Shown: positions 10,001-39,316, numbered from the stretch's first letter. The stretch: 64,000 bases of DNA from Perna viridis (GCA_037379345.1 CM074521.1:29164704-29228703); one strand, 5' to 3'. Translations and numbers: made by a program. The notes: generated by a model not told the origin, from the letters alone.

Positions 10001-12600
10001 TACGCTGCCCCAAAAGTTTAATCCCGATATCCATATCATCTTGAAAAATATTTTGTTTCTGACAAACAGATTAAAGATGATGGATTATCATATAAGTTAT
10101 CTAAAATTAATTTGTTTGTACTTGCATACTTTTTTTCGCCATCGCTAGTTATTTTGAAATTCGTTGCTTGGATTTACATAGTTAAGTCGCCGACCATGAT
10201 CTTGTTCGAAGTTATCATTTCAATTCTCCTATCATAACATTTGTAAAAGTCCCAGCATGTTTTCTCGAAAGTGACTCCTTTTGAAACTACTCTTCAAAGA
10301 ATGCAAAACCCCGAGAGTACCATACTTCCAAGACAGGGTTTTGAGTCCACTTTCGCTCCCTCAAACCCCTGACATACTCATTCATATTTAGCGGGTATCG
10401 TCCAGCCAATTCCAATTGGTTACTTTTCCGGGTAAGGAGCACCAATAAAAGTCGATTTAACATATAATGTCAGTAGAATCGTAAACAAAAACACGAGGTA
10501 ATGACTTGGGAAGAGGAGAACATTGGTACCGATTTATACATCGAAAACATTGACGTCAAATATCTCGACAACTGCAAATGAGATTTTTACTGAATTTGGT
10601 TGATATATTCATCTAAGAGGTCCAATAAAAGTCCGGAAAAAATCGCGCGCGTCTCGGTCGCCATTTCAAAATGGCCGCCTATGAGTCATTGAAAATTGAT
10701 ACCCAGGTTTAGACCGTTCCTATTAATAATATACGGCTCAATTAATAATTTGAAATAAGTATCGACTTCCAAGTTCAAAATGGCCGCCATCACATTAGGA
10801 ATTTCCAAATTGTCTGATTCTAATTTGTGTAACGAATGCATCTTTAAAATATATGTTAATGACGTTTCATAAAATTATCAAAACATGCGTTCCGTTTTAT
10901 TAAACACAAACAAAATTTAAATATCCAGTCAATGGATGTATCAACTGATTCAGTGTATTATTATTTACATACAAAGACAGCATTGAAAAATATATAATAT
11001 ACCTTAAGATTTTTTCAATTGCTTAATACTGATTTGCTCTTTATATTGTTTGTTGTCTTTTATAAAATAATAATATCAAAGTTTGTAATACAGAATTATA
11101 GCTAACCCTTCGGCACGTCATACACTGCAGGTAAGTGTTAAATCAAACAGTAATAGACTACCACTGACATCATATGGTGATTGTTCATTGTTCATTGTTC
11201 ATTATTCATTTTACATCTTTTAATTTCATTACACCAATCATTTATATATTTGACTATTATGGTTTCTGGTTGGGGTACTAATTCTAAAGAGGCTATATAT
11301 TCATTAAAAAATACTGAATTGATGATTGAGATCATCTAAACTTTAGTTATAAATACGGGTTCCTTTCTTAAAAAATGAAAGGAAAAATGAAAGTAGATAC
11401 CAGTATGATACAGTAATTGATTTTCATAATCTCAAAAAGGAATAAAATCTATTATATAAGATTGAACTTTTTTTTAATCAGATTAATTATACAAACGTCA
11501 AACAGCAATCCATACACTTTTGTTTTGTGTGATGAATTGGACGAGCAATGAGTCTTTAATAAGAGAACTGAATATGTTGAAGGGGAACTTAGAAAGAGAC
11601 GACTTAGATTCATATTGGATCAATGATTTCCACCATATCTAGTGGTGTAAGAAAAAAGATCAATAATGAAAATAATTTTAACTGATTTTTTCCAAATTAA
11701 ATCAAATCAAATAAGCTTTACTAAAAGCTATTAAAATACCATACAAGCTTAAGCTGTTAACGGGATTGTATAACTGACATAATGGTGTTTACAATGAATT
11801 AAGATATTCATATCGTAGATCTAAGCTTCGAGTGATTTATTTATTTCTGTGTTTAGTGTTTTAAATGGAATAAGAACCAAAAAAAAGACTTTTACTCTTA
11901 TTTAATAGTATCACGATAACCGAAGCACGAACGCTTAAATGGGAAATGTATCTTGTGTATATTCCATTTAACATAAATGTAAACTTCACTTGTAAGTAAA
12001 ATAGTTTTTTACAACCATATTCATCATTTTATACTTGTGACAAACTCTTTATGTTTCACAGTTTAAGGGTTGTTTACTTAATAAAGTGCCACATTTACAT
12101 CAAAATTAGTGCTGCCAGTTGGTAGTTGTGGAGTAAGGGAGATTATCTTATAGCTATGAAGATGGTTGCACCCTTGCTACCAGAATTATAGCAATTATTC
12201 TCTCTAAATAAATAATTAAGTACAATATAGGAAAATGAACTTCAGATTCTACTTGTATAATGTAAAGACTATCAGTATACCCCAAATGTTGAAAAGGGTT
12301 CATATTCCCTTTGATATATTGAATTTGTGTTTACACAGTAATTTATGTAGTTAAGGTTCAATGCCTTGTTCAAGAATTTGTATAGCAAAATATCGTATCT
12401 GACATAAGATTTTACATCGACTTGACTTGAACGTCTTCATTTTTATTATATTGTTACTATAAGTACAGCATACTTGTTACTATATTGTTACTAAAAGTAG
12501 AGCATACTTTTTTTATGGTTATGTTCAAGTTGAAATCGAAAACAAACAACTCCAAATCATAGTAAGTTATGCATAGGGGTATACAAATGTGTATTTTAAG

Positions 12601-12719
12601 TGGAAATGGAGGAAAGAAAAAAACACGATAGCTCTCGTTACTCCTCGAAGAAATCTCAGACTTCCTACGTGTGGTGAATTGGGTCAACTGCCTTCAGAGA
12701 AACCATATGCAGCTCAACC
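12601..12719 (+). pseudogene. Orphan leader exon of the ZU5 family (probably paralog B), directly upstream of HSPA12
   Basis: TTTTAAG| ... CAACC|GTATGT. It encodes TPRRNLRLPTCGELGQLPSEKPYAAQP, homologous to 2579-2700 (TPRRNVRTPFRGELDRLSPDIPYAAQP) and 39317-39419. The upstream intron (~12340-12600) also aligns to ~2235-2578. Confidence 0.75.
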
Positions 12720-12899
12720 GTATGTATCGTACAAGCAAAGAAAAGATGCTAATTTTGTGCAAAGTACATGTGCATGAGTAGAAAATACTAAGTTTGCGAT
12801 TCGGAATGCCACACTGCTCCATCCGATCCTATTGATACAGGGAAGATAATGTAAACTTACAAGTTCTATTAATATATATATATATATATTCGGACTCAT

Positions 12900-13135
12900 T
12901 TAAAACTAGAAGCATGGACCAGGTGCACCGGTAGGCTAAGTGTCCTCTGCTTTTCTAGAAATACCCGCCAATTTGCTCATTAAAAGTCAAGTCCGGGGTA
13001 GACGAAAGAGAAAGGAAAACTATGACTCGTTGAACAAATAAGTTTTCATGCATTGTGCAGATATATACACCGTAATGACCCATGAGTTCACGATGACGAC
13101 CATAAATTTTCTGTAGTGATGACTTTAATCCTGTA
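12900..13135 (-). mobile_element. Penelope-like retroelement 3'-end fragment
   Basis: The reverse complement contains the last ORF codons (KIYGRHREL) plus the 3' UTR of the 38.7-kb element. Confidence 0.72.
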
Positions 13136-13425
13136 GTATCCTTTATCTCTTATCTCAATATCTTTTGGGCAGATGTGATGTTACAAAACCCCGAAACTGA
13201 ATAGTTTAACGATATATATATAGCGACAACTGAGGTTAAAGGATCTAGCTTAACGATGTTCCATCTTTTTGAATCAGAACAGCTATAAAGTCAGCCTAAT
13301 ATGACTAAAGGAATATGCTATCAAGTAGAAGAGCGCAAAAACATATCTGACGAATGCTGCCTTTATTTCAGATATTCACGTTATCAATAAGCCGTAACTT
13401 TTTTTTAAACAACTAGTAATTACAG

Positions 13426-13776
13426 ATGGCGCGTCAAGAATTGTCTTCTCATAAACCAGTTGGAATGCTCAGGGATGACTTCCAGTATATACTGGCAATT
13501 GATATCGGCACCATTTACTCCGGATATGCATTTGCAAACAGAGATGATATAGATATGACAAAGGGAAATGTCAAAGTAGACTGTTCGCAAGCTTGGAACT
13601 CTGGCAAGCCAAACTTGATCTCATCGAAAACACCAACTTGTATATTACTGGACCATCAAAAGAATCTCGTTGCATTTGGATTTGACGCAGAGAATAAGTA
13701 TTGCCAAATTGTTAATGATAAAAAGGAGAAGGACTATTACTTTTTCAGGAGATTCAAAATGGTTTTGTACAAAAAG
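13426..13776 (+). CDS. HSPA12: HSPA12-like Hsp70, coding exon 1
   Basis: The ATG follows the acceptor TTACAG directly. The exon encodes phosphate-1 motif LAIDIGTIYSGYAF, then SKTPTCILLD, AFGFDAENKY and YFFRRFKMVLY, all typical of HSPA12. Donor is AAG|GTATCT, phase 0, 117 codons. Confidence 0.93.
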
Positions 13777-14240
13777 GTATCTCTCATGCTTGTATTAGAA
13801 CTGTTTAATTTTATGGCTATGGAATAAATGCATGGTAGGCTTATTTTTCGTCGGTTGTCGAACAAATATTCTGCGGGAGCAAGAACTAATCGAATACATA
13901 TTACAGTTGTAATTTATAAATTTATTTGTTCTGTTTCTTTCGTAGTTTTTAATTGCTATAGATCTTTTGTTTATTTTGATTGCCGTCTTTCGCAGTTCAT
14001 GTCAATATCACAGTATATTTGTTGGATATATATTTGTCATCAATTTTTGAATTATTTGGAATTAACTAATCCCGACCCTATTCGAACGTTATCATTTGGA
14101 TCTTATGAATTTCATAATACTTGATACACTTGATAATGTATATTAAAAGTTCTAGACCCTTTCACACTCTTTACGCTTGCTTAAAACACTTTACTTACAA
14201 GACACTTAATCATCATATTGTACGTCTAACTTCTATACAG

Positions 14241-14459
14241 GAAATCTTGTCAGACCTTCATTTGACCGATGAATTTGGAAAAACATTGCCCGCCGTTTTT
14301 GTCTTCGGGAAGTGCATCTCTGCACTTATGGCGGATTTCTTCGAATCAATGTGTATAAAAGGCGTTCAACTTAAGGATGAAGAAGTTCGTTTTGTTATCA
14401 CAGTACCCGCCATATGGAGCGATGCAGCCAAACAATTTATGAGGCAGGCGGCTAATCAG
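14241..14459 (+). CDS. HSPA12: HSPA12-like Hsp70, coding exon 2
   Basis: Acceptor CTATACAG|, donor CAG|GTAACT, phase 0/0. Encodes VRFVITVPAIWSDAAKQFMRQAA. Confidence 0.93.
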
Positions 14460-15424
14460 GTAACTAATCTATCATTATTTCCTTCTATAGAATTAACAGT
14501 TTAACATAATATAATTATTTCAATATAAATAAAATGTAAGCATTCGTTTTGTTCATGAATCTGTTGAACATATAATGTAATCACCAATACTGAGTTTTAC
14601 TGAGTTGGTCTTTTAACTAAACGGATCTTTTTGAAATCGTACAAAAAGCACGATACAACAAACGAAAATGCTGGGATAGATATCTTTTTGCAATAGGTGG
14701 GGAGAGGGGGGTTCACAAACTTTTTCCTGAAAACCATACTCTTACACGACAGTCACCTCTTATCAAATGTACCATTAGACCGTTACTTCTATCACGGTGT
14801 GTTTATTTATTTTACAAAGCCATATCCATAGGCCCTTGTGAATTTGCTTGACACTCGTGTGTATTGTATACCCGGCCGTGAGTAGTTTATTCCAGATCAG
14901 GAGCGAAGTTATTAATTCATGTTACACTCAATCAGGTGTGCGTAATTACCAGAATGCAACTACACATTAAATATAGAGGTACATTAGTAATGTTATGACA
15001 GAACATTTGGACACAACCAAATAACTAATGTTAAACATGTCGTTATAATACGTTTGTTCTCAGTTCCAACGATGGGTTCAAAAGAGGTCAATAAATCAAA
15101 ATGTTCAACAACAATAAGAAAAAAAGATAAGCAGTTTTATTTAATAGATATACTTTTTTGTTGTCGTTATATGTGTCTATCCGAACATCTAGGGAAATGG
15201 TTTTATTGATTAAGCAACGAATATCTCGAAATATGCTGTTGACAACTAATACAAAACTGAACTTCGTCTTCATTTTTTGCAATGAGTTCTTAGTAAGTGG
15301 AATTTTAATAGTTGCCATTCGCCTCCGCCGGATGACATATATATTGATGCATTCTTCTTTTTTCATTTTACTGTAAAGTCCGTATGAAGAGGGCAAAGAT
15401 ATAATTATCGTTCAGTTAGTTATG

Positions 15425-17521
15425 CTGCACTCACACCATGCCGAATATCCTTGCGATTGACATGAGAATATCATTCGCCGCTCAACTGTAATGATCGTAT
15501 AGCTATCGCTAGACATTTCGTACTCACTCTCAAGTAATCGTGGTCGTTCGTGAGTTTTAACGAATATTAGAAATATGCTCCTAAAATTCGCAAGGAATTG
15601 AAATTCTCAATCCAATGCTAAATAATTCATATGCATCCTTAGCCAATCGTATTGATGGCAAGCCATTTGCATTTAACGTAATACATACATTATATATGTT
15701 CGCAAGATTGTTTTCTTTTTCCATTTAAGACTGATAAGATATTGTTATCAATGCTTACGAGTCATTCAAGAATGAAGCAAATAGCTTACAACTGTTAAAC
15801 GATATTCAAAAAAATGTCTTACAAATGCCTATGAATGGCTTACCAACGCTAGCGAGTGGTTACAAATGCATGCGAATAAAATACGAACATTGAGATAATA
15901 TTACAAACATCTTGCAATATCAAAGTACTCTTTTTCCTCTAAAAAAAATCAAGGTAAGTTGATAATGGCTGAGTCTATGTAACAAGTTGCTACTCTATCA
16001 GTGCTAGTTTCACAGTACGCAGATATTCATCGTGCTGTTATTGCTCTAAAACAAGAGCAAAAGAGAAGGCGAAGAAGACGTCGACAAAGAAAGGAGAAGT
16101 CATGCTGAGAAACTGACGACTGTCCAGAGAGCAAATGATACAACATTCACATTACTACAAGTTAATGGAGAACCTTTGTCATAGCGACCCGGATAGGTTC
16201 AAACACTTTACCAGAATACCACCGGAATTGTTTGATGGGCTGTTGAGTCGTATTAGACATATAATCACAAAACAGAACACGAGATACCGAGACGCTATAG
16301 GGCCTGGATTAAGGTTAGCAGTGACCCTTCATAATTTAGCAACTGGGAATTTATATGTAGATCTGCCGTATAGTTACCGTGTTGTAGATAAGAGATCCGT
16401 ATGTTTGCACCTTTAGTGTGCAAAGCTATAATTGACGAGTATTTAGATGAAATTGTTCCAGCACCAAGCTCAAAAGATAAAGTGGAAAGAAATAGCCTCG
16501 TATTTGGTGTCATCAATTTAAAGAGTTTGTTCTAATGGTTCTAGTCACTCAAACATGTCCTGCAGAGCCGCTGTCAACTTTGCATGTCGCCTCTCTGTCT
16601 TCTTTTTTGGTGTTTCAGATGGAGGTGGTGTTAGAGAACGTGGCGGAGTATCAATTGATGGAATATAATTGTTAAATCTATCACTGTAATAATCGGCATT
16701 TATTATTTCCGCTTGAGTTTTATTGCTTTTCTGTCCATTTATTAATCTTCGGAAGGAGTACATGTAAGTCTGTCCGATTTCTTTCTGCCTCGACCCCTTC
16801 CAGCGTTTTTGTCCACCTCTCGGCATGAATTGTTAGTTCAAAAACTAAATTCAAAATGAATGTATTCGAGAAGAATTGTTAAAGAGTAATCATGGAAACC
16901 AAGGTTATAGCGGTAATCAAAAGAATGTAATCCAAGGACAAAGATCAGACATGGAAAACAGATATTCACAACAAAGAACTTAGAGTAACTAAAATCATAC
17001 ATACAAAGTAACACAAGCAAATGAGCAACTCGGACTCCACTAAAAACTGGGAGCATGGACCAGGTGCACCGGTAGGGTAAGCGTCCTCTCCTTTGCTTTT
17101 CTAGAAACACCCGCTGAGTTCCTCATAAAACGTCAAGTCAGGGGTAGACGAAAGAGAAAAGGAAAACTATGACACGTTGAACAAATTTTTCTTGCATTGT
17201 GCAGGCAGATGGATACACCGTAACGATCCACTAGTTCATGATGACGGCCATAAAACTTTTTTAGTGAAAAAATTGCAACGCATGCGTTTTTATTCGTTTT
17301 ATTTTAATTGACACTCTCAAGAAATCGTTAGATTCGCAACGATTATCGCAAGCATTCGTTAGGGTCGTAACATCATAAGGTTCGTATAGAATTCGTAAGA
17401 CAGTTGTAACGCCTTGATGATTTTCAATACTTTAAAAACCCAATTTTATTAATTTCTACGAATTGTCTGCGAACGCCAAAATTTTTCATTCGCAAGGATC
17501 TTCGGCATAGTGTGAGAGCAG
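15425..17521. mobile_element. PIF/Harbinger transposon, internally deleted
   Basis: ~35-bp TIRs CTGC(A/T)CTCACAC(C/T)ATGCCGAA(T/G)ATCCTTGCGA. The + strand carries a transposase N-terminus (DPDRFKHFTRIPPELFDGLL..RDAIGPGLRLAVTLHNLATG, 16135-16470). A convergent - strand ORF (16545-16826) is probably the start of the second, Myb/SANT-type gene. Confidence 0.82.
16884..17262 (-). mobile_element. Penelope-like retroelement 3'-end fragment inserted in the Harbinger element
   Basis: Reverse complement of the ORF end plus 3' UTR at 38990-39278. Confidence 0.75.
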
Positions 17522-17979
17522 TTTTTTTAACAAATTTTATTAGTTTATATTTTATTAAGATTAGCTGAAAATGAATTGTACGAAATCAACTCGATAAAGA
17601 GACCTTTGAAAATGTTATATATATACAATAACTGTATATTGACCAGAAATCCAAAACAATATACAGATGAAAATTAAAATCAGTGTACAAGTCGAGGCTC
17701 GCCGAGCTTTTTTCATTGGTGCAGAATTCGTATATCGTATTTTTATTTATTTTAGTCAATATGCAGTTACTGCCATTATACTGCATTCCTTGTCATTTTT
17801 AATCGTTATATTTTTATACGACGTGATTTTTACATTACATTTTCTTTCCTACTGTGGCCACCGATACTGACGGTACGATAAACAGGTGAAAACAAGCTGA
17901 ATGAAAATATTCGTTCTCTTTCGAATTAAATGAACAACCAATGCATTGTCCAAAAGCGAAACAAATATCAATTAAAATC

Positions 17980-20280
17980 AGGGGTCCATCTTTAGCATGT
18001 ATTTATTCTATCAGTAACGCAAGTGACAATTTAGGAACACAAAAATGAAAAAAGTAACACTAGTGACAAAAATACAAAATAACAATATATTTGATACAGT
18101 AAAAAATGTCAATGTCTTTGAAGCATTTAATATGATATTTTTGCCTGTCGTTTATTCATATCCTAAACCTGTATTGATCTAGACACCTAGAAATGCTCCT
18201 CATTGGTTTGAATAATAAAAGTAACAAAAGTGATATTTTTTCTAAGACAAAAGGAATCAAGGATATTTTTCCAATTTCTTCTTTCAAACAATTATTATCC
18301 TATCCTATCATTTTCATCCTAAGATATTGTATTGATTACTTGCAATTGAAACAGAGTCAGTTTTGCTTTTACGTGCGAAAAATGAAAATAAAAACAGTAA
18401 CACTAGTGACACATTGTAATTTATGTGACTTTTTAAAAAAAATATTTGAGGTCTATCAGTAAATCTGATCATTTTAAGGGCTGTTTCCAAAGACTGGCAT
18501 CCACGATGTACTTTTGTCCAACAAATTTAAGTTCTGGTATTGTTCCCAAAATGTTCTCCATGCCGTACCAGCATTCATCTCTTAATGCAAGAGGCCAATA
18601 AAAAGATGGATTTTCTAGGCTTCCTATTATGTGCATACAACTTACAAACAACTAGGTTTCATCACAATCTGTTACGATTCCAAGGTACGGTTTTTTGTCA
18701 TAATCCACTGGTACATACTGTTCAAGTAAATCTTGAGGATTTAAATCTGTGACATTGAGATAGTTTTGTTTGTTTCCGTCTGGATTATCGCCATTGTCAA
18801 TGTGTTCTTTTGTACTATTTTCATTGTAGTCGTTCTGTCTGGTTTGTTCCATTGGTAGTAAAACAATGAAGTGATTGGATACCCAATTCTGCCTTCTCAT
18901 GTCTTGCCTAGTTGTCGTCCACATTATAAAACTCGTTTCTTTGCATTTTATTTCTCTGGGTTTTATCATGCGGTAAAGGTCTATTCTGACGTTAGGGTTA
19001 CCCAGGTTTAGATATATCGAATATATGGGACGACAAAGCACACTAGCTAGGGCAAATGCTTGCTAAATACCCATATAAGTTTTATTCTTGGAAATTTTCA
19101 GGACCTCTCTCTCATATAACCTTCCAAATTCTCCATTTGACAATGCTTCATTTGCATATTCATCCAAGTAAAACGCAAAAGTTTTCGCAAGATAATATTT
19201 CTTTTTCCCAAATCCCCTTTCCAAGTAGCCATGATCCAAGTATCCATCCTGGAAAATACAGGATTTGAGAATAATTCGAACTCTAATTTCCTCACTCTCA
19301 CCCTCCTTTCCAGAGACAAGTATACTTCCCGGGTATGGTAAACAATTACCATATGCAGTGACTTTGACAGGATGAAGCGTTACATCATGTGGTATGTCAG
19401 ATGGTAGAATTGAATGTGTTCGATCCCAGTATTTGTGATACTTGGCGAGTAATTATAGTTAATTCTGTAACTTCTAATCTATGATTCGATAGATATTTTA
19501 GTATTTCCTCGTATGTATGACATTTTCCAAGTTCGGTTGATGTGCGCCAGAAATAATACTTTCTGGCCAGTGCCCTATCTTTAGGTACCAGTATTGCTGG
19601 TGATTGCAGTGTCTGGTGTCCTTCTTCATCATTGCGTGCTCCTTGGTGTTCTGTTTCTGATTGTTCACTTGACCGACTTCCCTTTGTTTTAGTTTTCGTT
19701 TTTCTGTTAATAAGGGAATGTACTTTCATATCGTGTCCTGCATGAAATGAGCCTTTCACGCAAGTGCAGCTCACATCTCTGTATGTACAGTATATTTCCA
19801 TATCCAGAGTAACATATTTGATGGCGTTTTAACGTTCCTGGAACGGGTTTGAGTGTTTCCTTTGATAAAATTATTTCCTTATAGTCTATTTCTTGCTGTC
19901 CTACTTCATACACAGATACGGCAGAATCCTGGAAGTTCTCTGCAAAATACTTGGCACTAATTATATCTTTCCCATGAAGAACCAGGTCATTTGCTCGTCT
20001 TTTCAGAGCACCACCTACTCTGTCTGGCACTCCTTATCCATATCCACTTTCATGAAAGTAACATTTTCCAGATAAATTTCTGACTGTCATTCCTTGTAGT
20101 TGGCCTGTTTTAAAATAATTAATTATGACTATAATAAAAATGAGTGTATATGGTATTTCTATCTTTATCATCTTGCTAAATTGATCATTTTTCATTTAAT
20201 AACTTAGAAAAACTATTGATTTGTCATTTGTGTTATTTTTTAATGGTTAGACAAATTAAAGTAACACAAGTGATATACGG
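17980..20280 (-). mobile_element. Sola-type (Sola2-like) DNA transposon remnant with a vertnin-like OTU domain
   Basis: The - strand reads YFHESGYG*GVPDRVGGALKR (canonical HGKGxxDGxGGxxKR) and LKPVPGTLKRHQI. It then reads VTAYGNCLPY..EIRVRII..TYMGI*QAFALASVLCRPIYSIY..IMWT..NWVSNHFIVL. Subterminal GTAACACTAGTGACA-like motifs are repeated. Boundaries approximate. Confidence 0.7.
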
Positions 20281-20640
20281 GCATATAAATTTATATAGAT
20301 TGAAAGTTTTAGGTCGTAGTTAATTTCTGCATATATGCGATTTGCAGTAGGGTAACTTGCGAACCTGGAAGGTCATTCAACTTAATGTAAGGTTTTTTAT
20401 TCACCTTTTTTCTAATTTTTAAACGTTAAAGCGAATGTCACATGTCAAATAATGTTTCTTTAATAAAAGCCATTTACCATATACTGTTTTAGTGATATAT
20501 AATATAAGTCACATCAGTAATACCGTAGACCTGTATTTACAAACTTAGGATGGGAGATCCATTGTATGATTTAACTACATAATATGCTCAACACTACAAC
20601 TGAATGATGTTATGGCAAGCCAAAGTGCACAGACATTAGC

Positions 20641-21365
20641 ATTTTCCAATATTAAAAAAATATTTTTTTGATATTACAAATTTGTTTTCTAATGTAACAA
20701 ATTGGATTTCTTATATCACAAAACACTTTTTTAATAATAAACAAATCTTATTTTTTAATATTAAGAATTGAATTGAATTTCTAATGTTAAAAAACTATTT
20801 TTTTTAATATTAGAAATTGATTTTCTAATATTAGAAAATGGATTTGTCATATTCAAAGACGATTTTTTAATATACGAAAATCATTTTTAATATTAAAAAA
20901 TGTGACTGATTTTCTAATATTACAAATTCATTTTCTTATATTACGAATTCATTTTCTAATATTACAAAACACTTTTTTAATACTAAAAATTCAATCGAAT
21001 TTTTAACATTAAAAAACGATTTTCTAATATAAGAAATTGATTTTCTAATATTAGAAAATGGATTTATCGTATTCTGTTACGATTGTTTGAATATTAGAAA
21101 ATCATTTTGTAATATTAAAAAATGTGACTGATTTTCTAATATTACAAATTCATTTTCTAACATAACACATTCATTTTCTAATATTACAAATTCAATTCGT
21201 AATATTACAAAATGTGTGATATTTTATAATATTACTAAATCAGGAATTTGTAATATTAGAAAATGAATTTTTAATATTACAAATTAAATTTGTATTATTA
21301 CAAATTCTTTTCTAGTATCAAAAAAACTGATTTTGTAATATAAGAAATTTTCTAATATAAAGAAT
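20641..21365. repeat. AT-rich satellite-like array (TTTTCTAATATTAGAAAA-type palindromic units)
   Basis: Dozens of ~20-25-nt units centred on TAATATTA, with higher-order repetition (e.g. 20810-20960 vs 21030-21190). Confidence 0.85.
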
Positions 21366-21834
21366 TTGTATGTTTCTTCACATACTATTTATCGTTAATA
21401 CGCAGTCCAATTTTACAAAACAGAATTATGAAAAATAATAAGGATGTCTCTTCCAAATAAATAAATGTAAGATTAATGAAATTTTCCTTACGAATTGTAT
21501 CATTTTGTGCCTTGAAATGGACTAAAAGAAAAATCCACATGTTGAATATTTATGCAGATAATTGGGCGTATTATCTGTGAAATGGACAAAATGTGCAGGA
21601 TGTAACCTCACCGACCTGTATATAGCGCGAGAACACGTGTATATTGTAATCCTTGTGGTTATATAATGTTCCCCGTGTAATGAATTCTGAATTCCACATG
21701 ACTATAAGATAAAACTTGTAATTTCCCCCGCCAAAACACTGACTGCTACATTATATAAATTGTATAGAAAATCTAAATGATCAATATGATAATTACGAAA
21801 ACCGAATAGTATCAGGTGGAGATTTTTTTATTGA

Positions 21835-22165
21835 ACTAACTATATCGACTTAGCTAACTAATTATATCCACTTTGCTAACTGGATATATCCACTTAGATA
21901 CATGTAACTGTTTATATCCACTTTGCTAACTGGAAATATCCACATAGATACATGTAACTGTTTATATCCAACTAGTAACTGGTTATATCCAAATAATGGC
22001 TGGTTTTATCCAACTATTAATTGGTTATATCGTCATAGCTAACTGTTTATATCCACTTACATGTAGCTAACTTGTTATATCTACTTAGCTAACAGGTTAT
22101 ATCCATCTACTAGCTGATTATATCCAACTAATAACCGTGTCTATCGACTTAATTAACTGGTTTTT
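21835..22165. repeat. ~22-bp minisatellite (GCTAACTGGTTATATCCACTTA consensus)
   Basis: About 14 degenerate tandem units. Confidence 0.85.
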
Positions 22166-23097: not shown

Positions 23098-23729
23098 AAC
23101 TACCATTGTTTGACGTAAAAACACCATAAAAATGTGCAATAAAAGAGAGACAATCTTGGTTTATTTTACAGAGTTGACAAAACAAGTTAATGCATACAGT
23201 GTTCAGTGTGTATATTACGTCAATTGTCGTTTTTCATATTTACGGAATGTCATTTTAGTATTAGTAAGTTGAATTTTTAGTCAAAGGGACGTAACCCACT
23301 AACACCCGACAACCTAGATCAGTATTTAAATATCTTGGAAACCTTAACTATTTACACTTCGGTAAGTAGTTACATTTAAATGGTTTGAAACTAATTATTC
23401 AAAGGAACCAAGTACTTACCACAGCTACAATAAGTCAAATATTTGAATTTGAAGTCCACTGCTGTCCATTGCTCCAATCGGAACGTAAAACAGTCTGTCG
23501 GTTTGGAAGGTTACTTCCCTTTGCTCAAAATTAAAAAAAAGAAACAAAGTCGGGAATATGAAAAAGTTTCATTAAAGGTGATTAACAAAATATCTCAACG
23601 GTTAACGATCATACACGATGTAATGTCATTATGGGACTCGTTAACAAATATATTATTCTTTCCGACGATACATATACCACCGTTTGGTAACTGCGCAAAT
23701 TTAGTATGCAGTTGTGTAAATATTTGTAG

Positions 23730-23877
23730 GCAGGGATAAAGAATGAGCAACTTCTCTTAGCACTGGAGTCCGAGGCAGCTTCTATTTACAGTCAATTTGT
23801 GAAGTCAAAAGACGCAAATGAACTACGACTTACTGTATCAAAAGTCGGGACTCGCTATCTTGTAGCTGATCTTGGCG
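23730..23877 (+). CDS. HSPA12: HSPA12-like Hsp70, coding exon 3 (not in ORF track)
   Basis: Acceptor TTTGTAG|, donor G|GTATAG, phase 1. Translates AGIKNEQLLLALESEAASIY...GTRYLVADLG(G). It lies 9.27 kb downstream of exon 2. Confidence 0.92.
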
Positions 23878-24188
23878 GTATAGTTAACCATTAAGCATGT
23901 CTTTACCAATTAATGAAATTGTTATACATGACACTTGACACAACAACTCCCATCCGCCAGATGAATTACATAAACATAGAACCAAGTAAACTGTCTTGAA
24001 CTATATAACAAAAAGGTTTTTTTCACGATTTACAAGAAAACATGTCTGACTTAAAAATGAATTCATGCATTAGAATAAAAGTTATTGACAAATTAACAGG
24101 ATAGAGTTAACGTCGGGTTTAATCTTCCCCATAATTCAAATGTTTCCTATTGTTATATTAATAATCTAAATATATTTTGAAATTCAAG

Positions 24189-25258
24189 GGGGAACCGCTG
24201 ATATTTCTCTTCATGAAAAACAATCTAATGGATTTTTAAAAGAAATACATTGTTCCCGTGGTGATGACTGTGGAGGAAACAAACTCAATGAAGACCTTGT
24301 ACAAGAAATGGTGAAAAATTTTGGCCGCCCTTTGATGAATGAGATAAAAAATGAACACCCTACAGTCTACTTTGATGTCCATAGGGAATTTGAAGCAGCT
24401 AAAAAAACTGTTGATGGAATACATGAAGATGATATGACGATGCGGTTACCGTCTCAATTTCTTGATCATTTACTTAAGAAAAGAATAGGCGAAGATCTAT
24501 TAGAGACAATAGAAATCGGCCCCCATGGGAGTGGCGTAAAGCTTAAATATGGCACTCTTTACATCAAACAGTCGATGGTGATAGATAAACTGTTTCAGCC
24601 AACCACAGATAGAATTGTTGAGTTGTTGAAGGTCGTTATGAATGAAGTTGATAAAAAGGACCATAGTGTCGACCGGATTCTCCTAGTTGGTGGTTTCTCT
24701 GAATCAAAATACATACAGAAATCTATTCGAGAAGCATTTCGAGATAAACTTGTAATAGTTCCTGAATCATCTGACCTGTGCGTTCTTAAAGGAGCTGTAT
24801 TGTTTGGACATTCCCCTCGGCTCATATCTCACAGGGTCATGCGCTACACATATGGAATAGAAACTATAATCCCATTTGACAGCACTTTGCATGATACAAA
24901 ACAAAAGGTTTCAGTAGAGGGTGAGGAATATTGTGCCAATGCTTTCTCAATTTTTGTGCAGTTTGGAACCGTCGTTGAAATTGATACTACCGTTACATAT
25001 AGATTTTCCACCACTCACCCGTTTCAAAGGTTTGCAAAGATCAATATATTCATTTCCTCAAAAAGTAACCCATTATGTGTCAAAGAACCTGAATGCAGAA
25101 AAATAGGTGAAATGAGAGTAACAATTGTAAACCCTACAAAAGAGTTGCGATCCCTTAACGTAAGCCTTCTTTTTGGCAACACAGAGATTCAAATTGGAGC
25201 AAAAGATACTGTAACTGAAAAAGAGTACAGTGTCAAACTAGATTTTGTAATGTACTGA
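24189..25258 (+). CDS. HSPA12: HSPA12-like Hsp70, coding exon 4 (terminal)
   Basis: Acceptor TTCAAG|. It completes DLGGGTAD, is continuous with ORF 24308-25258, and contains ILLVGGFSESKYIQ and VLKGAVLFG. Spliced CDS = 351+219+148+1070 = 1788 nt, 595 aa, no internal stop. Confidence 0.93.
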
Positions 25259-28200: not shown

Positions 28201-29450
28201 TTGAAATTTGAATGGCCCTTTTTGGCTTTGCATAGATATTATATTTAAGAAGTCTTTTATAATTTGAGTGAACGGTTATTCAATACTAAATTTTTTTTAA
28301 AAAAATGTAACCGTGGAAAACTCCGTAACATGTCATTTACATCCGCACGTGGGTTTAGTCCTCCAAACCGTGAAAACAACCCCCGAAAGAACTATCTCTG
28401 AATTGATTATACATATTTACCCTTATACGATCGGTTACACGCATGCGTATATGTATTTGAATGTGTATCATTTGATTATTATAGTGTAATGTGTGAAACT
28501 TAATTGGTTTCTAAATATAACTGAACTATTTTTGAAATGTAATCAATGAAAAGTATAAGGATAAATGAGATCATGAATCAAAATATGACTCTTCAAATAC
28601 CTTTCAAAGAGACTACTAGCACTTAAAACCATTAGTGGTATGTATTTTGCAGCAAGAAAAATTTTACAAAAGAAACAATTTCACATTACAACTAGAAAAG
28701 AAAATAGAGAGTGTATACATTAATTACAACGAAGTATACATTCAAATATTTTGCATGGTTTAATTGTGTATTATATCATAGACAACGTTTACACAATATG
28801 TTTAGATTTTTACAAACGTGTTGTTTCACATTTAAAATCTTACTCTGTACAATGCCTACAACGCATATTCCGTAAAGAAGTGATCAAAAAGCACGAAAGG
28901 TATGTCAAAATACACACAATTTTGTACTTGAGTAATTTGTAATTAAATTCTCTTTTATTTGTTGCATAGTACATATGAAATAAAGCATATCAAAAACTGT
29001 AATAATTCAAAATGACGAGTTATAAATATTTTTTTAATGCAGGCTTGTTTTAGTTCTTATATTTATATAGACCTAAGATAAACAGACGAGTTATACGATT
29101 ATGGTGCCATAAAAGTCCAAGAATATAACAGAGTCAAGTTTCACTTTGTGTTCTGTGCAAGTTATCGTGTTTTTGGTAAATACGTGTACATGTCTCTGTT
29201 TTTGCTTTACCAAACTCCACGCGTACCTTTCACGATATACCCTTGTCAGCTTTTGGCTCAGTAAACCTAAGGAAAAACCCAGGCTCGACCAGGGACTTTT
29301 AATAAATCTTTTTGTAATTCCCTTCTTTAGTTTCTTTTTCTTATCGTACTTTAAATTTAGAACATGAATAAAGTGTCAGTAAACGCCATCATAATTTGCG
29401 TTTGTTTGAAAATGAGCATCCCAACTTATCTGTGTAAATATATTTATATA

Positions 29451-29627
29451 GCCTAGCTGGCCTAGTGATCTAGGGCGCTGGACTCAGTGCAGGCGGTATT
29501 GCCATAGATGTCACAGCGGTACGAGTTCGAGTCCCGCGGAGGGAACGACAAAAATTTGCTTCGCAAATTTGACAGTTCTAACATCGTTTGGAATTTTTCA
29601 GACACCCCTATATATATATATATATAA
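29451..29627 (+). mobile_element. tRNA-derived SINE
   Basis: Box A TGGCCTAGTGATC, box B GAGTTCGAGTCC and a (TA)n tail. Absent from the homologous site of paralog A. Confidence 0.8.
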
Positions 29628-30930
29628 CCCGGAAGAAAAAAGTGGCATATTGTTAGGTGACCCCGTAGCATCTGAGGAAATCACTCCACTACCAACTGAC
29701 AATTCGTCAGCGTATTCCGAGGAAGAAGTAGCCAGCGACAGTGACTATGACGATGATTTTGAAGTCGAAGTCAAAGAAACAGAGACATTTACTCTTTTAG
29801 ATTTTGGTGACGGCATTAAAGTTAGAATTCCAAGTGATATAGAGGCGTCTTTCAAATCCTTTTTGTCAATCATGTGGACCTCAATTGAGAAAAAACAGAG
29901 AAGTGTTTATTCAAAATCAGTTTCGAAATATGAAATATTTGTCTAATAACATTAGAATTATACCCAAGAAGGGACATTTGCTGTAGAAAAGGAAAAGTAA
30001 AATTACAAAGCCTTCGGAAAAGAATTTACCTCGGGCTAAGCAGTGTGTTTTGGCATTACTAGACAATGTTTGCTCCTTTTGAAAACAGAGATGTTACAAG
30101 GTACATAGCATTGATCGAAACCGGTGGAAATAACTGGAAGTCTGTCTGACAGATATTTATAATTTGTTTTATTGTTGTATTTTCCCGCCATGTCCCGGGT
30201 TATTGGGGAAAGTAAAAGCACTCAATCATGTTTTATCTCCCCACTTACTTTATTTGTCTGTCCATACTAAGGAACCTTTCTTCCAAGGATTGTCATGTTA
30301 TTGGTTTTACGTTTTTGTTTTGTTTGTTTGTTTTTTTTTTGTATAGTTAACGTCGACTTTCGTATTTCACATGTATGAATAATTTCACATCCTTTATTTT
30401 GGGGACTATTACAGCTTGTGTTATGGTATGACTTTTCATCTTCGAAGACCGTAGGGTGAACTGTACAAGTTAAATTGTACGTTAATTGGCATTCCTACCA
30501 CTTCTACTATTTTTAAATGGATTTAAAATAGACATTATTACTTTTCATTTAGGACGATGGGTTTATTGTGTTTAAGTGTATCAGACTAAACAGTTTTGGA
30601 ATTGCGTCCGAACCAAAAGTAATTGACGGTGTGGTTGATCCATCAGGAAAAGTGTTGTCCACAGGAATTTGTGGCAGATTGGATATACACTTGGAGGAAG
30701 GATGTGTTACTGAAAGGCAAAAATACCAGTATTCAGTAAGTACATTTTTTTTTAAATGAAGACAGATTTGTAATATGGATATATACAATTATGTATAACT
30801 TGAGTAAAGAATAAAAGTAAACCGAACTAGTTGCAGATGCAGTGTGTTGTGCATAATATGCCAGATAAAGGAATGCCTTAATTTACCACATAAATTGGCA
30901 TATCAATTTATTTTTGTACTAAAACATAAA

Positions 30931-31643
30931 ATTATAGGATTGAACAGCTATTTTGGGTCGTTCATCTCTCCACACCCAAACAGTACATGAACGACCTTCG
31001 GCCGTTCATTGTGTTTGGGAGCTCCGAGATCAGTTCATACATGCATGAACGACCGAAAATAGCTGTTCAATCCTTATAATCCTATCCGACAGTCAAAGTT
31101 ACCTCTGCGAGCTTCAGTCGGTTATATTGATACACTGTTTTTACGCTTCAATATACACAAATTCCTTTGCACACGTATGGGAGAACGGACGAATATTTAA
31201 ACATAATCGGCTGCACAACGACAGTGAAAGCGGCATGGACGATGTTATAGTTGGCATTGAAAAATATGAGATGTAAACAATTCAGCAGGACTATAATTAT
31301 AAAGGAAATACAACAAGGAAGAAGGAACATTACAACAAGGTGTTTTTAAGGGTTCAGTCAGACTAAGTTATAAATTTCTTTCCCCGAGCTGAAAATTATT
31401 CTCTGTAAACAAATTTGACCGGTAAAATCAATGTGCATGTAATAAACTATTCATACGGCTATATCATGCCGTTCAGTTCGTTGCCATACTCTACACGGCC
31501 GCCATATTGGTTTCAAGTTGACTGGCGTTTATGCATGTATGAACGATCTGTCGAAGTTCATTCAGGTATGAACTTTCTGGCAACGACGTTCTCGACCAAT
31601 CAAAAACGGCTATAAGCATGAGGAATCTCATCATAAGAATTAT
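30931..31643. mobile_element. Crypton-like non-autonomous insertion with a terminal 150-bp nested palindrome
   Basis: Present in paralog B's intron and absent from A's. Bounded by ATTAT direct repeats. 30931-31080 is a long hairpin. No element-spanning TIRs. Confidence 0.6.
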
Positions 31644-32080
31644 TTCATTTTGAATTTTTATACATAAAAATAATATAATGATGTTTAAACTTTTAGATTC
31701 AAAGACCAGATCCCAATTATGCAAAGAAGCTAAAGGATCCAAATAAACTGATTGCTGCAGTCAGTGACAAATTGACGATCAACTTTAACAAAAAAAAATT
31801 CAACAAACCTATTTCATTGGTTGCTACGCTCACCACAGATGAAGCGAATGGTTCTGATTTTGACAGCTTTGAACTCAAAGGAATTGTATATAAAAACGAC
31901 AAGCCAGACGTTATCAACACAAAAGTAGAACAAGTTACAGATACTAAATACAAAATGACACTCGACAAACCTTCAAGGTAGTAAAATTGAGGATTTTGAC
32001 TTACCTAATTATTGACATTGTTTTGAAATCGTAATCTTTCCGCTGATTGCGTTAGACTAAATTAAAACTTTATAGATGTT

Positions 32081-32467
32081 CTATACTAACAATGTAGCCT
32101 CGGATACCTCTGTTGAACGGGTAATCATTGTAGATTCTTCATATTGTACACTAACAATATAGCCTCGGATACCTCTGTTGAACGGGTAATTATTGTAGAT
32201 TCATCATAATCTATACTAACAGTATAGCCTCGGATACCTTCGTTGAACGGATAATCATTTTAGATTCATTATATTCTATACTAACAATGTAGCCTCGGAT
32301 ACCTCTGTTGAACGGGTAATTATTGTAGATTCATCATAATCTATACTAACAGTATAGCCTCGGATACCTCTGTTGAACGGGTAATCATTGTAGATTCATT
32401 ATATTCTATACTAAAAATGTAGCCTCGGATACCTCGGTTGAACGGGTTATCATTGTAGAATCATTAC
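32081..32467. repeat. 65-bp minisatellite, 6 copies
   Basis: Units start at 32081, 32146, 32211, 32276, 32341 and 32406 (CTATACTAACAATGTAGCCTCGGATACCTCTGTTGAACGGGTAATCATTGTAGATTC...). Confidence 0.95.
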
Positions 32468-35400
32468 AATGATTTCCAGTCAAAATTAAACATTTAGGAG
32501 AGGAAAACCTGAGATTGATAAGAATAAATATTGATATACAAAAATGATTGCCACAATTTTAAATTTGAATATCGTAATACAAAAAATGCAAATTGGCAGT
32601 TTGTGTAAATAACACCTATACTACAATTGGTGCAAATTGTGATATTCAGCTGACATTGTTTTATTAAAATGCTTTCAAATTCTGGCATGTTTTCACAATC
32701 ACCTCTGTATGGTTCTTTCGAACTATTCTAATTATCTAAACACTATTACAGGGTTCTTATTGCTTTTTTGCGAAGAAACACAAACTACAACCGCGTAGAA
32801 CCAATGCTGAGAAATGAACTTGATCGACGTTTCAAAGTGAAGGAACCGTGTAAAATTGTATTATTCTTCCATCAAAGGGTTGACCAATGTGTACATTTCT
32901 TCGCCGAATGCACGTCTGAAAGAGATATTGAAAAAGGAGTGATCACTTCAAAAAGCGGAGGCAGAAAGCTCCTTTTTGAATCTGATGTTTTGTTATATAC
33001 ACAGCAAAGAATTCGTATTCGCCCGCACGGGTGTATTCGTACACCACTTGGGGCAGATTCAAAAACTACTTTTTATTTTTCTTGTGGACGTCAAAGAAAA
33101 TTTTTTGTGAATTTTCTGTGCAGTTAAACATATCTTTGGGTGCCTCTGTAGATGCTATTATAGAGTTTTCAGCAGACAATCAGGCAAAAGGCAAAATCGC
33201 TAAAGCAAAATTCAATATGGACTTCATATACAATTCTGAAAATCGTCCACGTGTTTAAAGTTGCATCTAAGTTACACATTTTTTTTTTATAAATTTTAAC
33301 TCATAATAATTATAGTAAAGAATAAAGTGTACTGTCAAATAAAAGGATTGTTATGTTCGCCTTTCTTCAGATTTCCTCAGAAGATCAATTTTAAGGATAT
33401 CCAAGGACATCTGTAGGGAGTAAATGTAAAAACTGTTGACGCGGTAGAGCGATCTTGTTGATGAGAATACTGCACTTTAAAAAAAAGAATAATTTGCAAA
33501 TGTCAGATTGTTTTACATATTATTCAGAATTGAGGTATATCAGGGAGACTTCTTATTTACTTATTTTGGATTTGGAGTGCCAAAGTTCATTATTATTAAA
33601 TCGTGGTCCTGAGGTCAAGGTTGGCTACATAGATGGTTTAGGTAATCTGTTGAATCAAAGTACTGACTACTCCGTCCTTATTTAAGATTACGAAGCTAGG
33701 ACTCTAGAAGGAATATGCACACCGTCGACTGCTTCTCTGTATGTCTGATGGACTCAAAGTAAAGCTAAAATAAATAGAGGCAAAATGGGTTGGCCAAATG
33801 TAGGGGAGGGAAGAGGTCAATGATCATTACCCAATAACCTCTATTAATGGAATAACGCAGATATTTTAAGGATGCTTAGGATTCATCATAGAAACCATCA
33901 AAACTTTAGAAAGGTTTGAAATAAAGTTAGTAGATTAGATAAACTGTATATCATTAGGACTTTGTACAAGTCCTTACAGCTTACAAACTCTCCACATTAC
34001 ATCTCATTAGTTTCGAAAGCTTTTCAGTGGTCATCATTCCACTTGGAACAGTGTACCGTGAACGGAAACAACGTACACAGAAAAAAAATGAAACGTGTTT
34101 CTCATCTGTTTTCCATATGCTTAGGACAGTCACGAAAAACATATGAACACGTATGTGTACGACTAACAAATTAATACACTAAAAAAGGTAAAGCATATGC
34201 TAATTATGTCTTCCATATGTCTTAAGTGTTTGAAAAAAGTATGGTTTTCATATAATTTAGGACAACTGTTGTTTGCGATTTTGTAGGCTCTACATATCTA
34301 TTTCCGTATTGGTATGAACATCTATTTCCACATGCAATTTCACCTTTGTGGTTGAAACCGACTAAATTGAATCCGCCTGTATTTAGAAGCACCTCTACGT
34401 ACAACTAGAATATCTAAGAGGAAATATTGTCCAATAAAACATGTTTTCAGCCAGATGCAGATTTAAGGATTTTTAATTGCTATTTAGATTATGGAATGTA
34501 AACCACTTTGGGTCGTTTTACGCTGAATTAACCTGGAAGCGCTGAGAGTTTTATGTTGCACGTATCTTGGATGATATTCTTTCCTTACAATCCAATACAA
34601 ATCGTCAAAGGACATTAAACGTGACTAGGAAAATGATAATTTATATGCTGATCTCAAATTCTTATTGAAGAATATGATAGTATATGTTTATGTTATGGAT
34701 TTTATTCAACGTACGACTTTTTATCTTCGATTAATTTAAAAATAGAAACTATTAATGTGGTATGGGTTGTTATTACAAAGAAGATACGAATAAAACCTCG
34801 TTTCAATTTTTAAAATTGCCAATTACAATAAAACAATTATATGGTGTACGCGTGCCCATTTTTAAACAGAATCTGTAGATGTTTAAGTTTTGTTTTTATA
34901 TTTGGGACAAGTATTTTGTATTTGGGACTTTATTAGGAGTAACAAGCTCCTGTTGTTTCTCATCATGGATCGATTTGACTGCAAAAAGGATTCAAACAAT
35001 TTGATATGGAACCTTAACTTAGCACGCCGTTTGATGGTGGAAAACTCCTCAAATTCACTATCGATATTATTATCACTTCTTTTACCAGTCTTCAAACGGA
35101 TTCTGATAAAATTGTTCAGATATTTCAAACTTTAACGAATTTGACATGAACTGGGAACGAACTGCAAAACGCTCAAGCAACTGCAAGGGAACGCACAAGT
35201 TCATTTGGACTTCGACTAGCATCCGTTTTTCATTCGTTCTTATAAGTTTGAGAACGTTGCAATTTGATATGAACGTGGAGAATTTTTGTGAAAACATAAA
35301 AGTTTTAAACGTTATCAAAACGTTTTCTATTCGTTGTGTTCGTTAGGTGATCGTTATCAGAAAGTTAAACCAGTTCACAAAATACTTTTAACACGTAAGG

Positions 35401-39278: not shown

Positions 39279-39316
39279 GAATAAAGCTGAACTAACTTTT
39301 TATATTTGCCTGACAG

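What the first reader, a model, noticed from the sequence alone, without database searches (positions are those of the whole stretch)
12340..33258. Intact HSPA12 gene nested in a ZU5-ZU5-UPA paralog, with apparent capture of its 5' exon/promoter
Seen: in paralogs A and C the leader exon (TPR..GEL..PYA..P, phase-2 donor) lies 1.3 kb and 0.66 kb upstream of exon 2. Paralog B's body (29.6 kb) has no such exon nearby. A third copy sits at 12601-12719, 700 bp upstream of HSPA12; it is closer to A than to C (as B's body is), and its upstream intron is also homologous to A's. The HSPA12 ATG directly follows a splice acceptor with in-frame stops just upstream, so the gene probably needs a 5' exon. Joining 12719 to 13426 gives GCTCAACC|ATGG, a near-ideal Kozak context. 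Inference: a 12-kb intron-containing HSPA12 copy landed in sense orientation in this intron of paralog B, took over its promoter and leader exon as 5' UTR, and the host body then decayed. This would be a concrete route by which expanded bivalve HSPA12 copies gain new expression patterns.
Basis: partly seen in the sequence, partly recalled or inferred. Interest (0 to 1): 0.78.

Follow-up and report, generated by a model that had tools for sequence, protein, structure and literature searches.

The report
HSPA12 gene inside a dead gene's intron
An intact, expressed mussel HSPA12 chaperone gene lies between the orphaned first coding exon and the body of a dead neighbouring gene, but assembled transcripts show it uses its own upstream sequence, not that exon, so the proposed promoter capture is not supported.

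Summary
The sequence observations hold. A 119-bp copy of the family's first coding exon lies at 12601-12719. An intact four-exon HSPA12 gene (595 codons) follows at 13426-25258. The body of paralog B starts at 29.6 kb with no leader exon of its own.

The fold label also holds. A model of the Mytilus homolog matches the ankyrin-B ZU5-ZU5-UPA tandem (Foldseek E 1.3e-15), although Pfam finds nothing.

The key inference fails. Spliced cDNA contigs from three studies carry the HSPA12 exon 1-2 and 2-3 junctions. They run colinearly through the supposed acceptor at 13425/13426 to 13228, 13169 and 13010. None shows a 12719->13426 joint, and depth over the leader exon is zero in all four runs. The 5'UTR is unspliced and mostly made of an abundant repeat (12890-13314).

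Paralog B is dead throughout, but A and C are disabled too, so B's decay is not tied to HSPA12. The nearest HSPA12 paralog in this genome is only 38% identical, so this is not a recent duplicate that landed.

Most likely this is an ordinary HSPA12 gene with its own 5' end, sitting in the former intron 1 of a pseudogene in a decaying tandem array. Interest is low.

The parts
12601..12719 (+). Orphaned first coding exon ('leader') of pseudogene B. Its ancestral ATG at 12606 is thrown out of frame by a 2-nt deletion relative to A and runs into a TGA inside the exon.
   Evidence: There is zero RNA depth in four runs.
12366..12600 (+). Intron sequence upstream of the leader exon, homologous to A 2379-2578 at 64-71% identity.
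11949..12322 (.). Dispersed repeat (860 or more first-look candidates, 74-84% identity). It accounts for the low RNA depth at 12.0-12.4 kb.
12890..13314 (.). Copy of a very abundant dispersed repeat, in two segments (12890-13136 and 13131-13314). It makes up most of the HSPA12 5'UTR.
   Evidence: 9003 candidates; 86-88% identity for the first segment, 72-78% for the second. (mRNA contig reaches 13010).
13010..13425 (+). HSPA12 5'UTR as seen in cDNA contigs: colinear with the genome and not spliced at 13425/13426. The true start may lie further upstream, inside or at the repeat.
   Evidence: table 8: X1 record 6 (13010-13774), X2 record 11 (13169-13774), X6 record 21 (13228-13774).
13426..13776 (+). 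HSPA12 coding exon 1 (117 codons, ATG at 13426).
   Evidence: The joint 13776->14241 (GT..AG) is present in three runs.
14241..14459 (+). HSPA12 coding exon 2 (73 codons).
23730..23877 (+). HSPA12 coding exon 3 (148 nt). It follows a 9.27-kb intron full of transposon remains.
   Evidence: The loose-end consensus of the X1 and X6 contigs after 14460 is identical to 23731-23760. tblastn.
24189..25258 (+). HSPA12 coding exon 4, ending in the stop codon. Pfam HSP70 scores 23.6 bits against a cut-off of 20.6.
29438..29626 (+). Young SINE-like element with a (TA)n tail, 94-95% identical to more than 40 copies. It sits exactly where B's exon-2 acceptor and first ~7 nt should be.
29629..33258 (+). Body of pseudogene B (exons 2 to 5 of the ancestral structure). 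Exon 2 has several frameshifts and stops, and the last exon has a 2-nt insertion.
2579..7220 (+). Paralog A. Its start codon (2585) is intact, but it has a TGA in exon 2 at about 4353 and a 1-nt deletion in the last exon at about 6895-6926.
39318..43303 (+). Paralog C. The leader ATG is out of frame and exon 2 is split over three frames, while the last exon is intact (171 codons).

Best explanation
An intact, transcribed HSPA12-type gene (595 codons, four coding exons, 13426-25258) has its own 5' end. Its mRNA runs unspliced from at least 13010, inside a dispersed repeat, through the ATG. The AG in front of the ATG is not used as an acceptor.

The gene lies on the same strand between the orphaned first coding exon (12601-12719) and the body (29629-33258) of paralog B. 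B belongs to a mussel-restricted ZU5-ZU5-UPA-fold family. B is a pseudogene, so the 'host intron' is now just spacer DNA that has been rebuilt by transposon insertions.

B's neighbours A and C are also disabled, and only D, just right of the window, looks intact in the exons checked. The locus is therefore a decaying tandem array with an unrelated, old HSPA12 lineage lodged in it.

Shown: gene structures, splice joints, the colinear 5'UTR, the disabling mutations and the fold.

Inferred: that the 12.6-kb exon once belonged to B, and how HSPA12 came to lie there. That could be relocation into intron 1, or a larger rearrangement. It was not a recent duplication.
For: Transcript evidence:
- in three runs from three studies one contig each carries the GT..AG joint 13776->14241. 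In X1 and X6 the contig's overhang after exon 2 is listed and equals the start of exon 3. These are therefore mature cDNAs.
- The same contigs lie colinearly on 13010-13774, 13169-13774 and 13228-13774.
- No joint at 12719 is listed, and the bins 12431-12828 have depth 0 in all four runs.
- 13315-14480 is unique in the genome, so the spliced contigs are not a retrocopy.

Gene identity and integrity:
- exon phases fit and there are no stops.
- the best relatives are named HSPA12A/B-like, and Pfam HSP70 scores above its cut-off.
- the next HSPA12 paralog in this genome is 38% identical.

Paralog array:
- A, B and C carry disabling mutations.
- the leader and its upstream intron are 71-72% identical to A, against 70-74% for A-B introns and 88-92% for body exons.
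- there is no other leader copy upstream of B's body.
- ZU5-ZU5-UPA fold.
Against: - Logan contigs drop rare variants and break at repeats. A minor or condition-specific isoform that joins 12719 to 13426 cannot be excluded, and the true transcription start is not fixed.
- The only raw-read RNA run (X21) had no reads on HSPA12, so it says nothing either way.
- The three informative runs are labelled RNA only by guess. Their cDNA nature rests on the spliced joints.
- No A-like intron-1 sequence survives beside the leader exon or upstream of B's exon 2. The link between the leader and B's body therefore rests on position, order, strand and matching divergence, not on continuous homology.
Confidence: 0.8

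Rival explanations
1. Exon and promoter capture. HSPA12 transcripts start at paralog B's promoter, include the leader exon as 5'UTR and splice 12719->13426. This would be either the main form or a tissue- or stress-specific form.
For: The sequence permits it. There is a GT donor at 12720 and an AG acceptor at 13424-13425 with a T-run upstream. Both features are on the same strand and 706 bp apart. The runs sampled do not cover all tissues or stresses, and contigs show presence rather than absence (notes).
Against: Three independent cDNA assemblies read through the acceptor colinearly. None has the joint, and the leader exon has zero depth in four runs. Nothing upstream of the leader (8650-12600) is expressed except repeats, so B's promoter looks silent. 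Joined to 13426, the leader would add two upstream ATGs (12606 and about 12707), one of them overlapping the HSPA12 start out of frame.
Confidence: 0.07
2. The 12.6-kb exon is not B's leader. It is the stump of a fourth paralog whose body was deleted. B lost its own leader separately, and HSPA12 was always intergenic.
For: Homology to A stops 3 nt after the donor. The leader exon is much more diverged from A (72%) than B's body exons are (88-92%).
Against: It needs two independent deletions. The leader's upstream intron is as diverged from A (71%) as A-B introns are (70-74%), so the age is the same. No second leader copy or stump lies at 25.3-29.6 kb. The encoded N-terminus is disordered in the model (pLDDT below 50 for residues 1-86), so fast change is expected there.
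Confidence: 0.1
3. The transposable-element copy at 12890-13314 supplies the HSPA12 promoter and transcription start, as a case of TE exaptation. This would make the TE, not paralog B, the source of the gene's regulatory input.
For: The longest cDNA contig starts at 13010, inside the repeat. There is no depth in 12630-12828. A (TA)n TATA-like run lies at 12867-12889, directly before the repeat.
Against: Contigs break inside repeats, so 13010 is not a mapped start. The three contig ends differ (13010, 13169, 13228). The 416-nt UTR holds 12 upstream ATGs. This reading is compatible with the best explanation rather than opposed to it.
Confidence: 0.35

Closest known systems
Bivalve HSPA12 (HSP70 subfamily 12) expansion genes, for example the Mytilus 'heat shock 70 kDa protein 12A/B-like' genes
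   Same: It shares the N-terminal IDIGT..SGYAF and DLGGGTAD nucleotide-binding motifs. Pfam HSP70 hits above its cut-off. The best database relatives carry HSPA12A/B-like names. About 100 family matches are found in its own genome, in line with the published bivalve expansions (PMC11268181, PMC10939072; titles and abstracts only).
   Different: It is a deep, isolated lineage: 38% identity to the nearest paralog in its own genome, and 59% to the best outside hit (a Logan contig of unknown species). It has a 9.3-kb transposon-filled intron and a repeat-derived 5'UTR.
Ankyrin / UNC5 / PIDD / NLRP1-FIIND ZU5-UPA modules (PDB 4D8O, 3G5B, 7CRW)
   Same: The predicted fold of the Mytilus homolog P0123 aligns over about 470 columns with the ankyrin-B ZU5-ZU5-UPA-DD tandem (E 1.3e-15, probability 1.0). 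It also aligns with UNC5b and the NLRP1 FIIND.
   Different: Pfam ZU5 and UPA models find no sequence-level match. No death domain, ankyrin repeats or receptor part is seen. The family has a disordered acidic N-terminus. It is small and so far found mainly in mussels (13 hits among 1.84 billion representatives). Model confidence is moderate (pLDDT 64).
Nested genes and host-exon capture (chimeric transcripts between a host gene's 5' exons and an intronic gene)
   Same: An intron-containing gene lies in sense orientation between exon 1 and exon 2 of another gene. A compatible donor and acceptor pair is present.
   Different: The defining chimeric junction is absent from the transcripts examined. 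The host is a pseudogene.

Membership tests
HSPA12 / HSP70 superfamily | Match to the Pfam HSP70 model (PF00012) above its gathering score | tested here: met
   The exon-4 product scores 23.6 bits against a cut-off of 20.6. The relatives P0002 and P0040 hit at E 5e-12 and 2e-12.
HSPA12 / HSP70 superfamily | Actin-like ATPase phosphate-binding motifs (N-terminal DxG(T)xxSG and DLGGGT) | tested here: met
   AIDIGTIYSGYAF lies in exon 1. DLGGGTADI is rebuilt across the exon 3/4 joint.
HSPA12 / HSP70 superfamily | Closest named relatives are HSPA12A/B, not canonical HSP70 or HSC70 | tested here: met
   the Mytilus 'heat shock 70 kDa protein 12A/B-like' proteins are the best named hits, at 36-43% identity (36-41%; P0002 at 42-43%).
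HSPA12 / HSP70 superfamily | Complete open reading frame, transcribed and correctly spliced | tested here: met
   Exon phases fit and there are no stops. The exon 1-2 joint is in cDNA contigs of three studies, and the exon 2-3 joint is shown for two of them (X1, X6). The exon 3-4 joint is inferred from GT/AG sites and homology only. The joined model was not searched, by rule.
ZU5-ZU5-UPA supramodule proteins | Two ZU5 beta-sandwich domains followed by a UPA domain (fold) | tested here: met
   The AlphaFold2 model of P0123 has Foldseek hits to 4D8O (E 1.3e-15), 6M3Q, 3UD2, 3G5B and 7CRW. Mean model pLDDT is 64, and 70-90 over most of residues 90-535.
ZU5-ZU5-UPA supramodule proteins | Sequence match to the Pfam ZU5 or UPA models | tested here: not met
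   Neither the window's exons nor the full-length homologs give a Pfam hit at E up to 1.
ZU5-ZU5-UPA supramodule proteins | C-terminal death domain, as in ankyrin, UNC5 and PIDD | tested here: inconclusive
   The structured part of the model ends at about residue 535 and the tail is disordered. No separate domain-level search was run.
Host-exon / promoter capture by a nested gene | Transcripts that join the host's 5' exon to the nested gene's first coding exon | tested here: not met
   Four runs show no 12719->13426 joint. Contigs are colinear through 13426, and depth over 12431-12828 is zero. Contigs cannot exclude rare isoforms.
Host-exon / promoter capture by a nested gene | An active host promoter upstream of the captured exon | tested here: inconclusive
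   Nothing but repeat-derived depth is seen between 8650 and 12600. The host's first non-coding exon was not located.

The most novel reading that the evidence does not exclude
In tissues or stress states not represented in the assemblies examined, a minor HSPA12 isoform starts at the dead paralog B's promoter and splices its orphaned first coding exon (12601-12719) onto the ATG exon at 13426. A pseudogene's 5' end would then give an expanded HSPA12 copy a second expression programme.
Probability: 0.06. Interest if true: 0.55.

Novelty: new member of a known kind. Interest (0 to 1): 0.2.

Why it matters
If capture had been real, it would have shown a concrete way for expanded bivalve HSPA12 genes to gain new regulation. 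The transcript evidence does not show it.

What remains is modest:
- a well-defined, expressed and deeply diverged HSPA12 gene whose 5'UTR is mostly transposon-derived;
- a small mussel-restricted protein family with a ZU5-ZU5-UPA fold that Pfam's sequence models do not detect, seen here as a tandem array in which three of four local copies are already dead.

The case also carries a methodological caution. An AG in front of an ATG, together with a nearby orphan exon, is not evidence of splicing.

Tried and rejected
- Pfam on the window's family exons and on the full-length homologs gave nothing. The fold had to be tested by structure prediction.
- The Logan contig carrying P0121 (99% identical to C) is colinear with the genome, intron included, so it says nothing about expression.
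- The first own-genome DNA search with 12400-14500 was swamped by the repeat at 12890-13136. It was repeated with repeat-free pieces.
- I looked for A-like intron-1 sequence next to the leader exon and upstream of B's exon 2, using word size 7 and local and global alignment against shuffles. None was found. The insertion breakpoints therefore cannot be mapped, and a simple one-point insertion is not supported.
- I tried to retrieve the full-length HSPA12 protein of this species from the protein collection, in order to fetch its mRNA contigs. It is not there.
- ARAGORN does not call the SINE-like element at 29438-29626 as a tRNA. Its GTTCGAGTCC B-box-like motif was seen by eye only.
- No heat-shock-element triplet was found in 12300-13430.
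- The one odd loose end, in X1 at 13706, matches nothing within 104 kb around the locus, so it is not the leader exon.
- The raw-read RNA run X21 had no reads on HSPA12.
- The joined (spliced) HSPA12 model was not built or searched. Exons were treated one by one.
Full report
**What is in the window**

The window is AT-rich animal DNA (GC about 0.33). Its best protein relatives are Mytilus proteins at 36-59% identity. The assembly is 723 Mb in 46 contigs. It is therefore a mussel-like bivalve that is not itself in the protein collection.

A self-comparison shows two homology blocks between paralog A and the region in question:
- A 2459-2703 with 12482-12722, at 69%;
- A 3984-7995 with 29629-34075, at 74-87%.

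A third, more distant copy (C) lies at 39.3-43.3 kb. A search of the genome itself adds a fourth copy (D) just right of the window and three remote, weak copies.

**The observation**

- The exon at 12601-12719 is real. It has an AG at 12599-12600, a GT at 12720, and 119 nt, so the donor is phase 2.
- It encodes ...TPRRNLRLPTCGELGQLPSEKPYAAQP. A has ...TPRRNVRTPFRGELDRLSPDIPYAAQP at 2585-2700, and C has ...TPRIQSTGELGRKTPHKPYA at 39334-39411.
- Intron 1 is 1276 bp in A and about 655 bp in C.
- Sensitive tblastn with four leader peptides finds no copy between 25.3 and 29.6 kb.
- The exon is nearest to A: 72% identity, against 51-56% to C and D.
- The 120 bp upstream of it align with A's at 71%, far above shuffled controls.

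One refinement is needed. In A, in D and in the Mytilus galloprovincialis homolog P0123, this exon carries the start codon, so it is the first coding exon.

**HSPA12**

- tblastn with Mytilus HSPA12-like proteins maps four coding exons.
- cDNA contigs fix the exon 1-2 joint (13776->14241, GT..AG). The contig overhang after exon 2 is identical to 23731-23760, which fixes the exon 2-3 joint.
- The exon 3-4 joint (23877->24189) is inferred from GT/AG sites, from homology, and from the restored DLGGGTADI motif.
- Exon lengths are 351 + 219 + 148 + 1070 = 1788 nt, or 595 codons plus a stop, with fitting phases.
- The exon-4 product passes the Pfam HSP70 threshold.
- The exons were handled one at a time. 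The joined model was neither built nor searched.
- About 100 HSPA12-like matches exist in this genome, but the closest is only 38% identical over exon 4.
- The segment 13315-14480 is unique in the genome.

**The decisive test: transcripts**

The look-up of sequencing runs with exon 4 returned 20 runs of the same organism from seven studies that hold it, plus one raw-read RNA run. I laid four runs on 8650-14600.

In X1, X2 and X6 (three studies), one contig each contains the spliced exon 1-2 joint. In X1 and X6 the contig's overhang after exon 2 is listed and matches the start of exon 3. Because the genome holds no second copy of these exons, these contigs are cDNA.

All three contigs continue upstream of the ATG colinearly with the genome. 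They reach 13010 (X1, a 2682-nt contig), 13169 (X2) and 13228 (X6), with 1-3 mismatches. No joint at 12719 or 13426 is listed. The bins 12431-12629 and 12630-12828, which hold the leader exon, have depth 0 in all four runs.

The only other depth upstream falls on repeats. The stretches 11949-12322 and 12890-13314 are shown to be repeats by their copy numbers in the genome. The narrow spike at about 10376-10406 is read as a repeat from its very high depth and clipped read ends in all four runs.

Hence the dominant mRNA has an unspliced 5'UTR of at least 198-416 nt, and the AG before the ATG is not an acceptor.

Limits of this test:
- Contigs end inside repeats, so the start site is not mapped.
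- Contigs drop rare isoforms.
- The raw-read run X21 had no HSPA12 reads at all.

**The 5'UTR**

The stretch 12890-13136 belongs to a very abundant repeat: 9003 first-look candidates at 86-88% identity, with eight copies in the window. In other copies the stretch 13131-13314 matches a second segment of the same element, about 260 bp further on. Most of the observed 5'UTR is thus transposon-derived, and it contains 12 upstream ATGs. A (TA)n run sits just before the element. Whether the element supplies the promoter is open.

**The host family**

Pfam finds nothing in the exons or in the full-length homologs. The family is small: 13 hits among 1.84 billion representatives, and the named ones are Mytilus 'uncharacterized proteins'.

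An AlphaFold2 model of P0123, built with a 16-sequence alignment, has mean pLDDT 64, and 70-90 over most of residues 90-535. It matches several solved structures:
- the ankyrin-B ZU5-ZU5-UPA-DD tandem 4D8O (E 1.3e-15, probability 1.0);
- ankyrin-G/spectrin complexes;
- the ankyrin-R ZU5A-ZU5B pair;
- the UNC5b cytoplasmic domain;
- the NLRP1 FIIND.

No death domain is apparent.

**State of the paralogs**

- A has an in-frame TGA in that exon (about 4353) and a 1-nt deletion in the last exon.
- B's ancestral ATG (12606, aligned with A's 2585) is put out of frame by a 2-nt deletion. Its exon 2 has several frameshifts and stops. Its last exon has a 2-nt insertion.
- B's exon-2 acceptor and first ~7 nt are replaced by a young SINE-like element with a (TA)n tail (29438-29626), which is 94-95% identical to more than 40 copies.
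- C has its leader ATG out of frame and its exon 2 spread over three frames, although its last exon is open.
- D is open in every exon checked, and its last exon is identical to the database protein P0122. Its leader lies 8.4 kb upstream of exon 2, so long first introns are not unique to B.

Decay is thus general in this array and cannot be attributed to HSPA12.

**Is the 12.6-kb exon B's?**

Body exons of A and B are 88-92% identical. Their introns and 3' flank are 70-74% identical. The leader exon is 72% identical and its upstream intron 71%. The leader block therefore has the neutral A-B divergence, which fits a single duplication.

The leader exon encodes a disordered N-terminus (pLDDT below 50), so weak constraint is unsurprising. 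With order, strand and the lack of any other leader copy, this makes 'B's orphan first exon' the most economical reading.

It is not proven. Homology to A stops 3 nt after the donor, and no A-like intron-1 sequence is found on either side. Much of A's own intron 1 is itself repeat-derived.

**How HSPA12 got there**

A duplication younger than the A/B split cannot explain a gene whose nearest relative is 38% identical. Either the gene was relocated, or the region was rearranged more extensively.

The Mytilus homolog has a 760-bp intron 1 and no HSPA12 within 10 kb upstream or 7 kb downstream. This favours a derived state in B, but orthology is uncertain. This step is inference.

**Comparison with what is known, and verdict**

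HSPA12 expansion in bivalves is well documented (PMC11268181 and PMC10939072; titles and abstracts only). Nested genes, and genes lodged in dead neighbours, are common in repeat-rich genomes.

The one element that would have been new was capture of a host exon and promoter. It fails its defining test. The finding is a correct piece of sequence reading with an over-reaching inference. What is there is an ordinary, expressed HSPA12 gene in the former intron of a pseudogene. Two small side results remain: the repeat-derived 5'UTR, and a ZU5-ZU5-UPA-fold family that Pfam's sequence models do not detect.

The scan's earlier notes held only this same finding, plus one note on another piece that I did not use.

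Noticed in passing
window 12890-13136, 2898-3175, 16879-17267, 36756-36884, 38958-39279, 43509-43679, 54614-54920, 62317-62540: A dispersed repeat of about 245-300 bp has eight copies in the window and at least 9003 first-look candidates in the genome, at 86-88% identity. Its depth in RNA assemblies is very high, in the thousands to tens of thousands. One copy lies directly upstream of C's leader exon and one lies in A's intron 1.
   Followed up: partly
window 29438-29626: A young SINE-like element is 94-95% identical to more than 40 copies, often in paired or inverted arrangements. It has a GTTCGAGTCC B-box-like motif (seen by eye) and a (TA)n tail. ARAGORN does not call it a tRNA.
   Followed up: partly
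just right of the window: leader at window-style 65834-65941, exon 2 from 74291, last exon 82330-82941 (L033, L036): A fourth paralog, D, looks intact in the exons checked. Its first intron is 8.4 kb, and its last exon is identical to the database protein P0122. It is probably the only working family copy in this local array.
   Followed up: partly
window 48640-55771: A BEL/Pao-type LTR retrotransposon. Direct repeats 48640-49433 and 55010-55771 (89% identical) flank broken gag/pol reading frames. Pfam Peptidase_A17 hits at 52788-53069 (E 1.7e-12). GC rises to 0.43 here.
   Followed up: partly
window 20640-21368: A very AT-rich block (GC about 0.25) is made of direct and inverted repeats of itself at about 70-77% identity. 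It lies inside the 9.3-kb HSPA12 intron.
   Followed up: no
window 32076-32470: A tandem array with a period of about 65 bp (copies 89-92% identical) lies in an intron of pseudogene B and is absent from A. It shows as a gap of about 330 nt in the A-B alignment.
   Followed up: no
window 16135-16416 (+) and 18652-20030 (-): Open reading frames without Pfam hits lie in the large HSPA12 intron. They are probably transposon remains, and the first resembles a PIF/Harbinger-type N-terminus from memory only.
   Followed up: partly
window 13706 (run X1): One contig matches HSPA12 exon 1 from 13706 onward. It is preceded by 104 letters that occur nowhere in the 104 kb around the locus. It may be a chimeric contig or a paralog that shares a short stretch.
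   Followed up: partly
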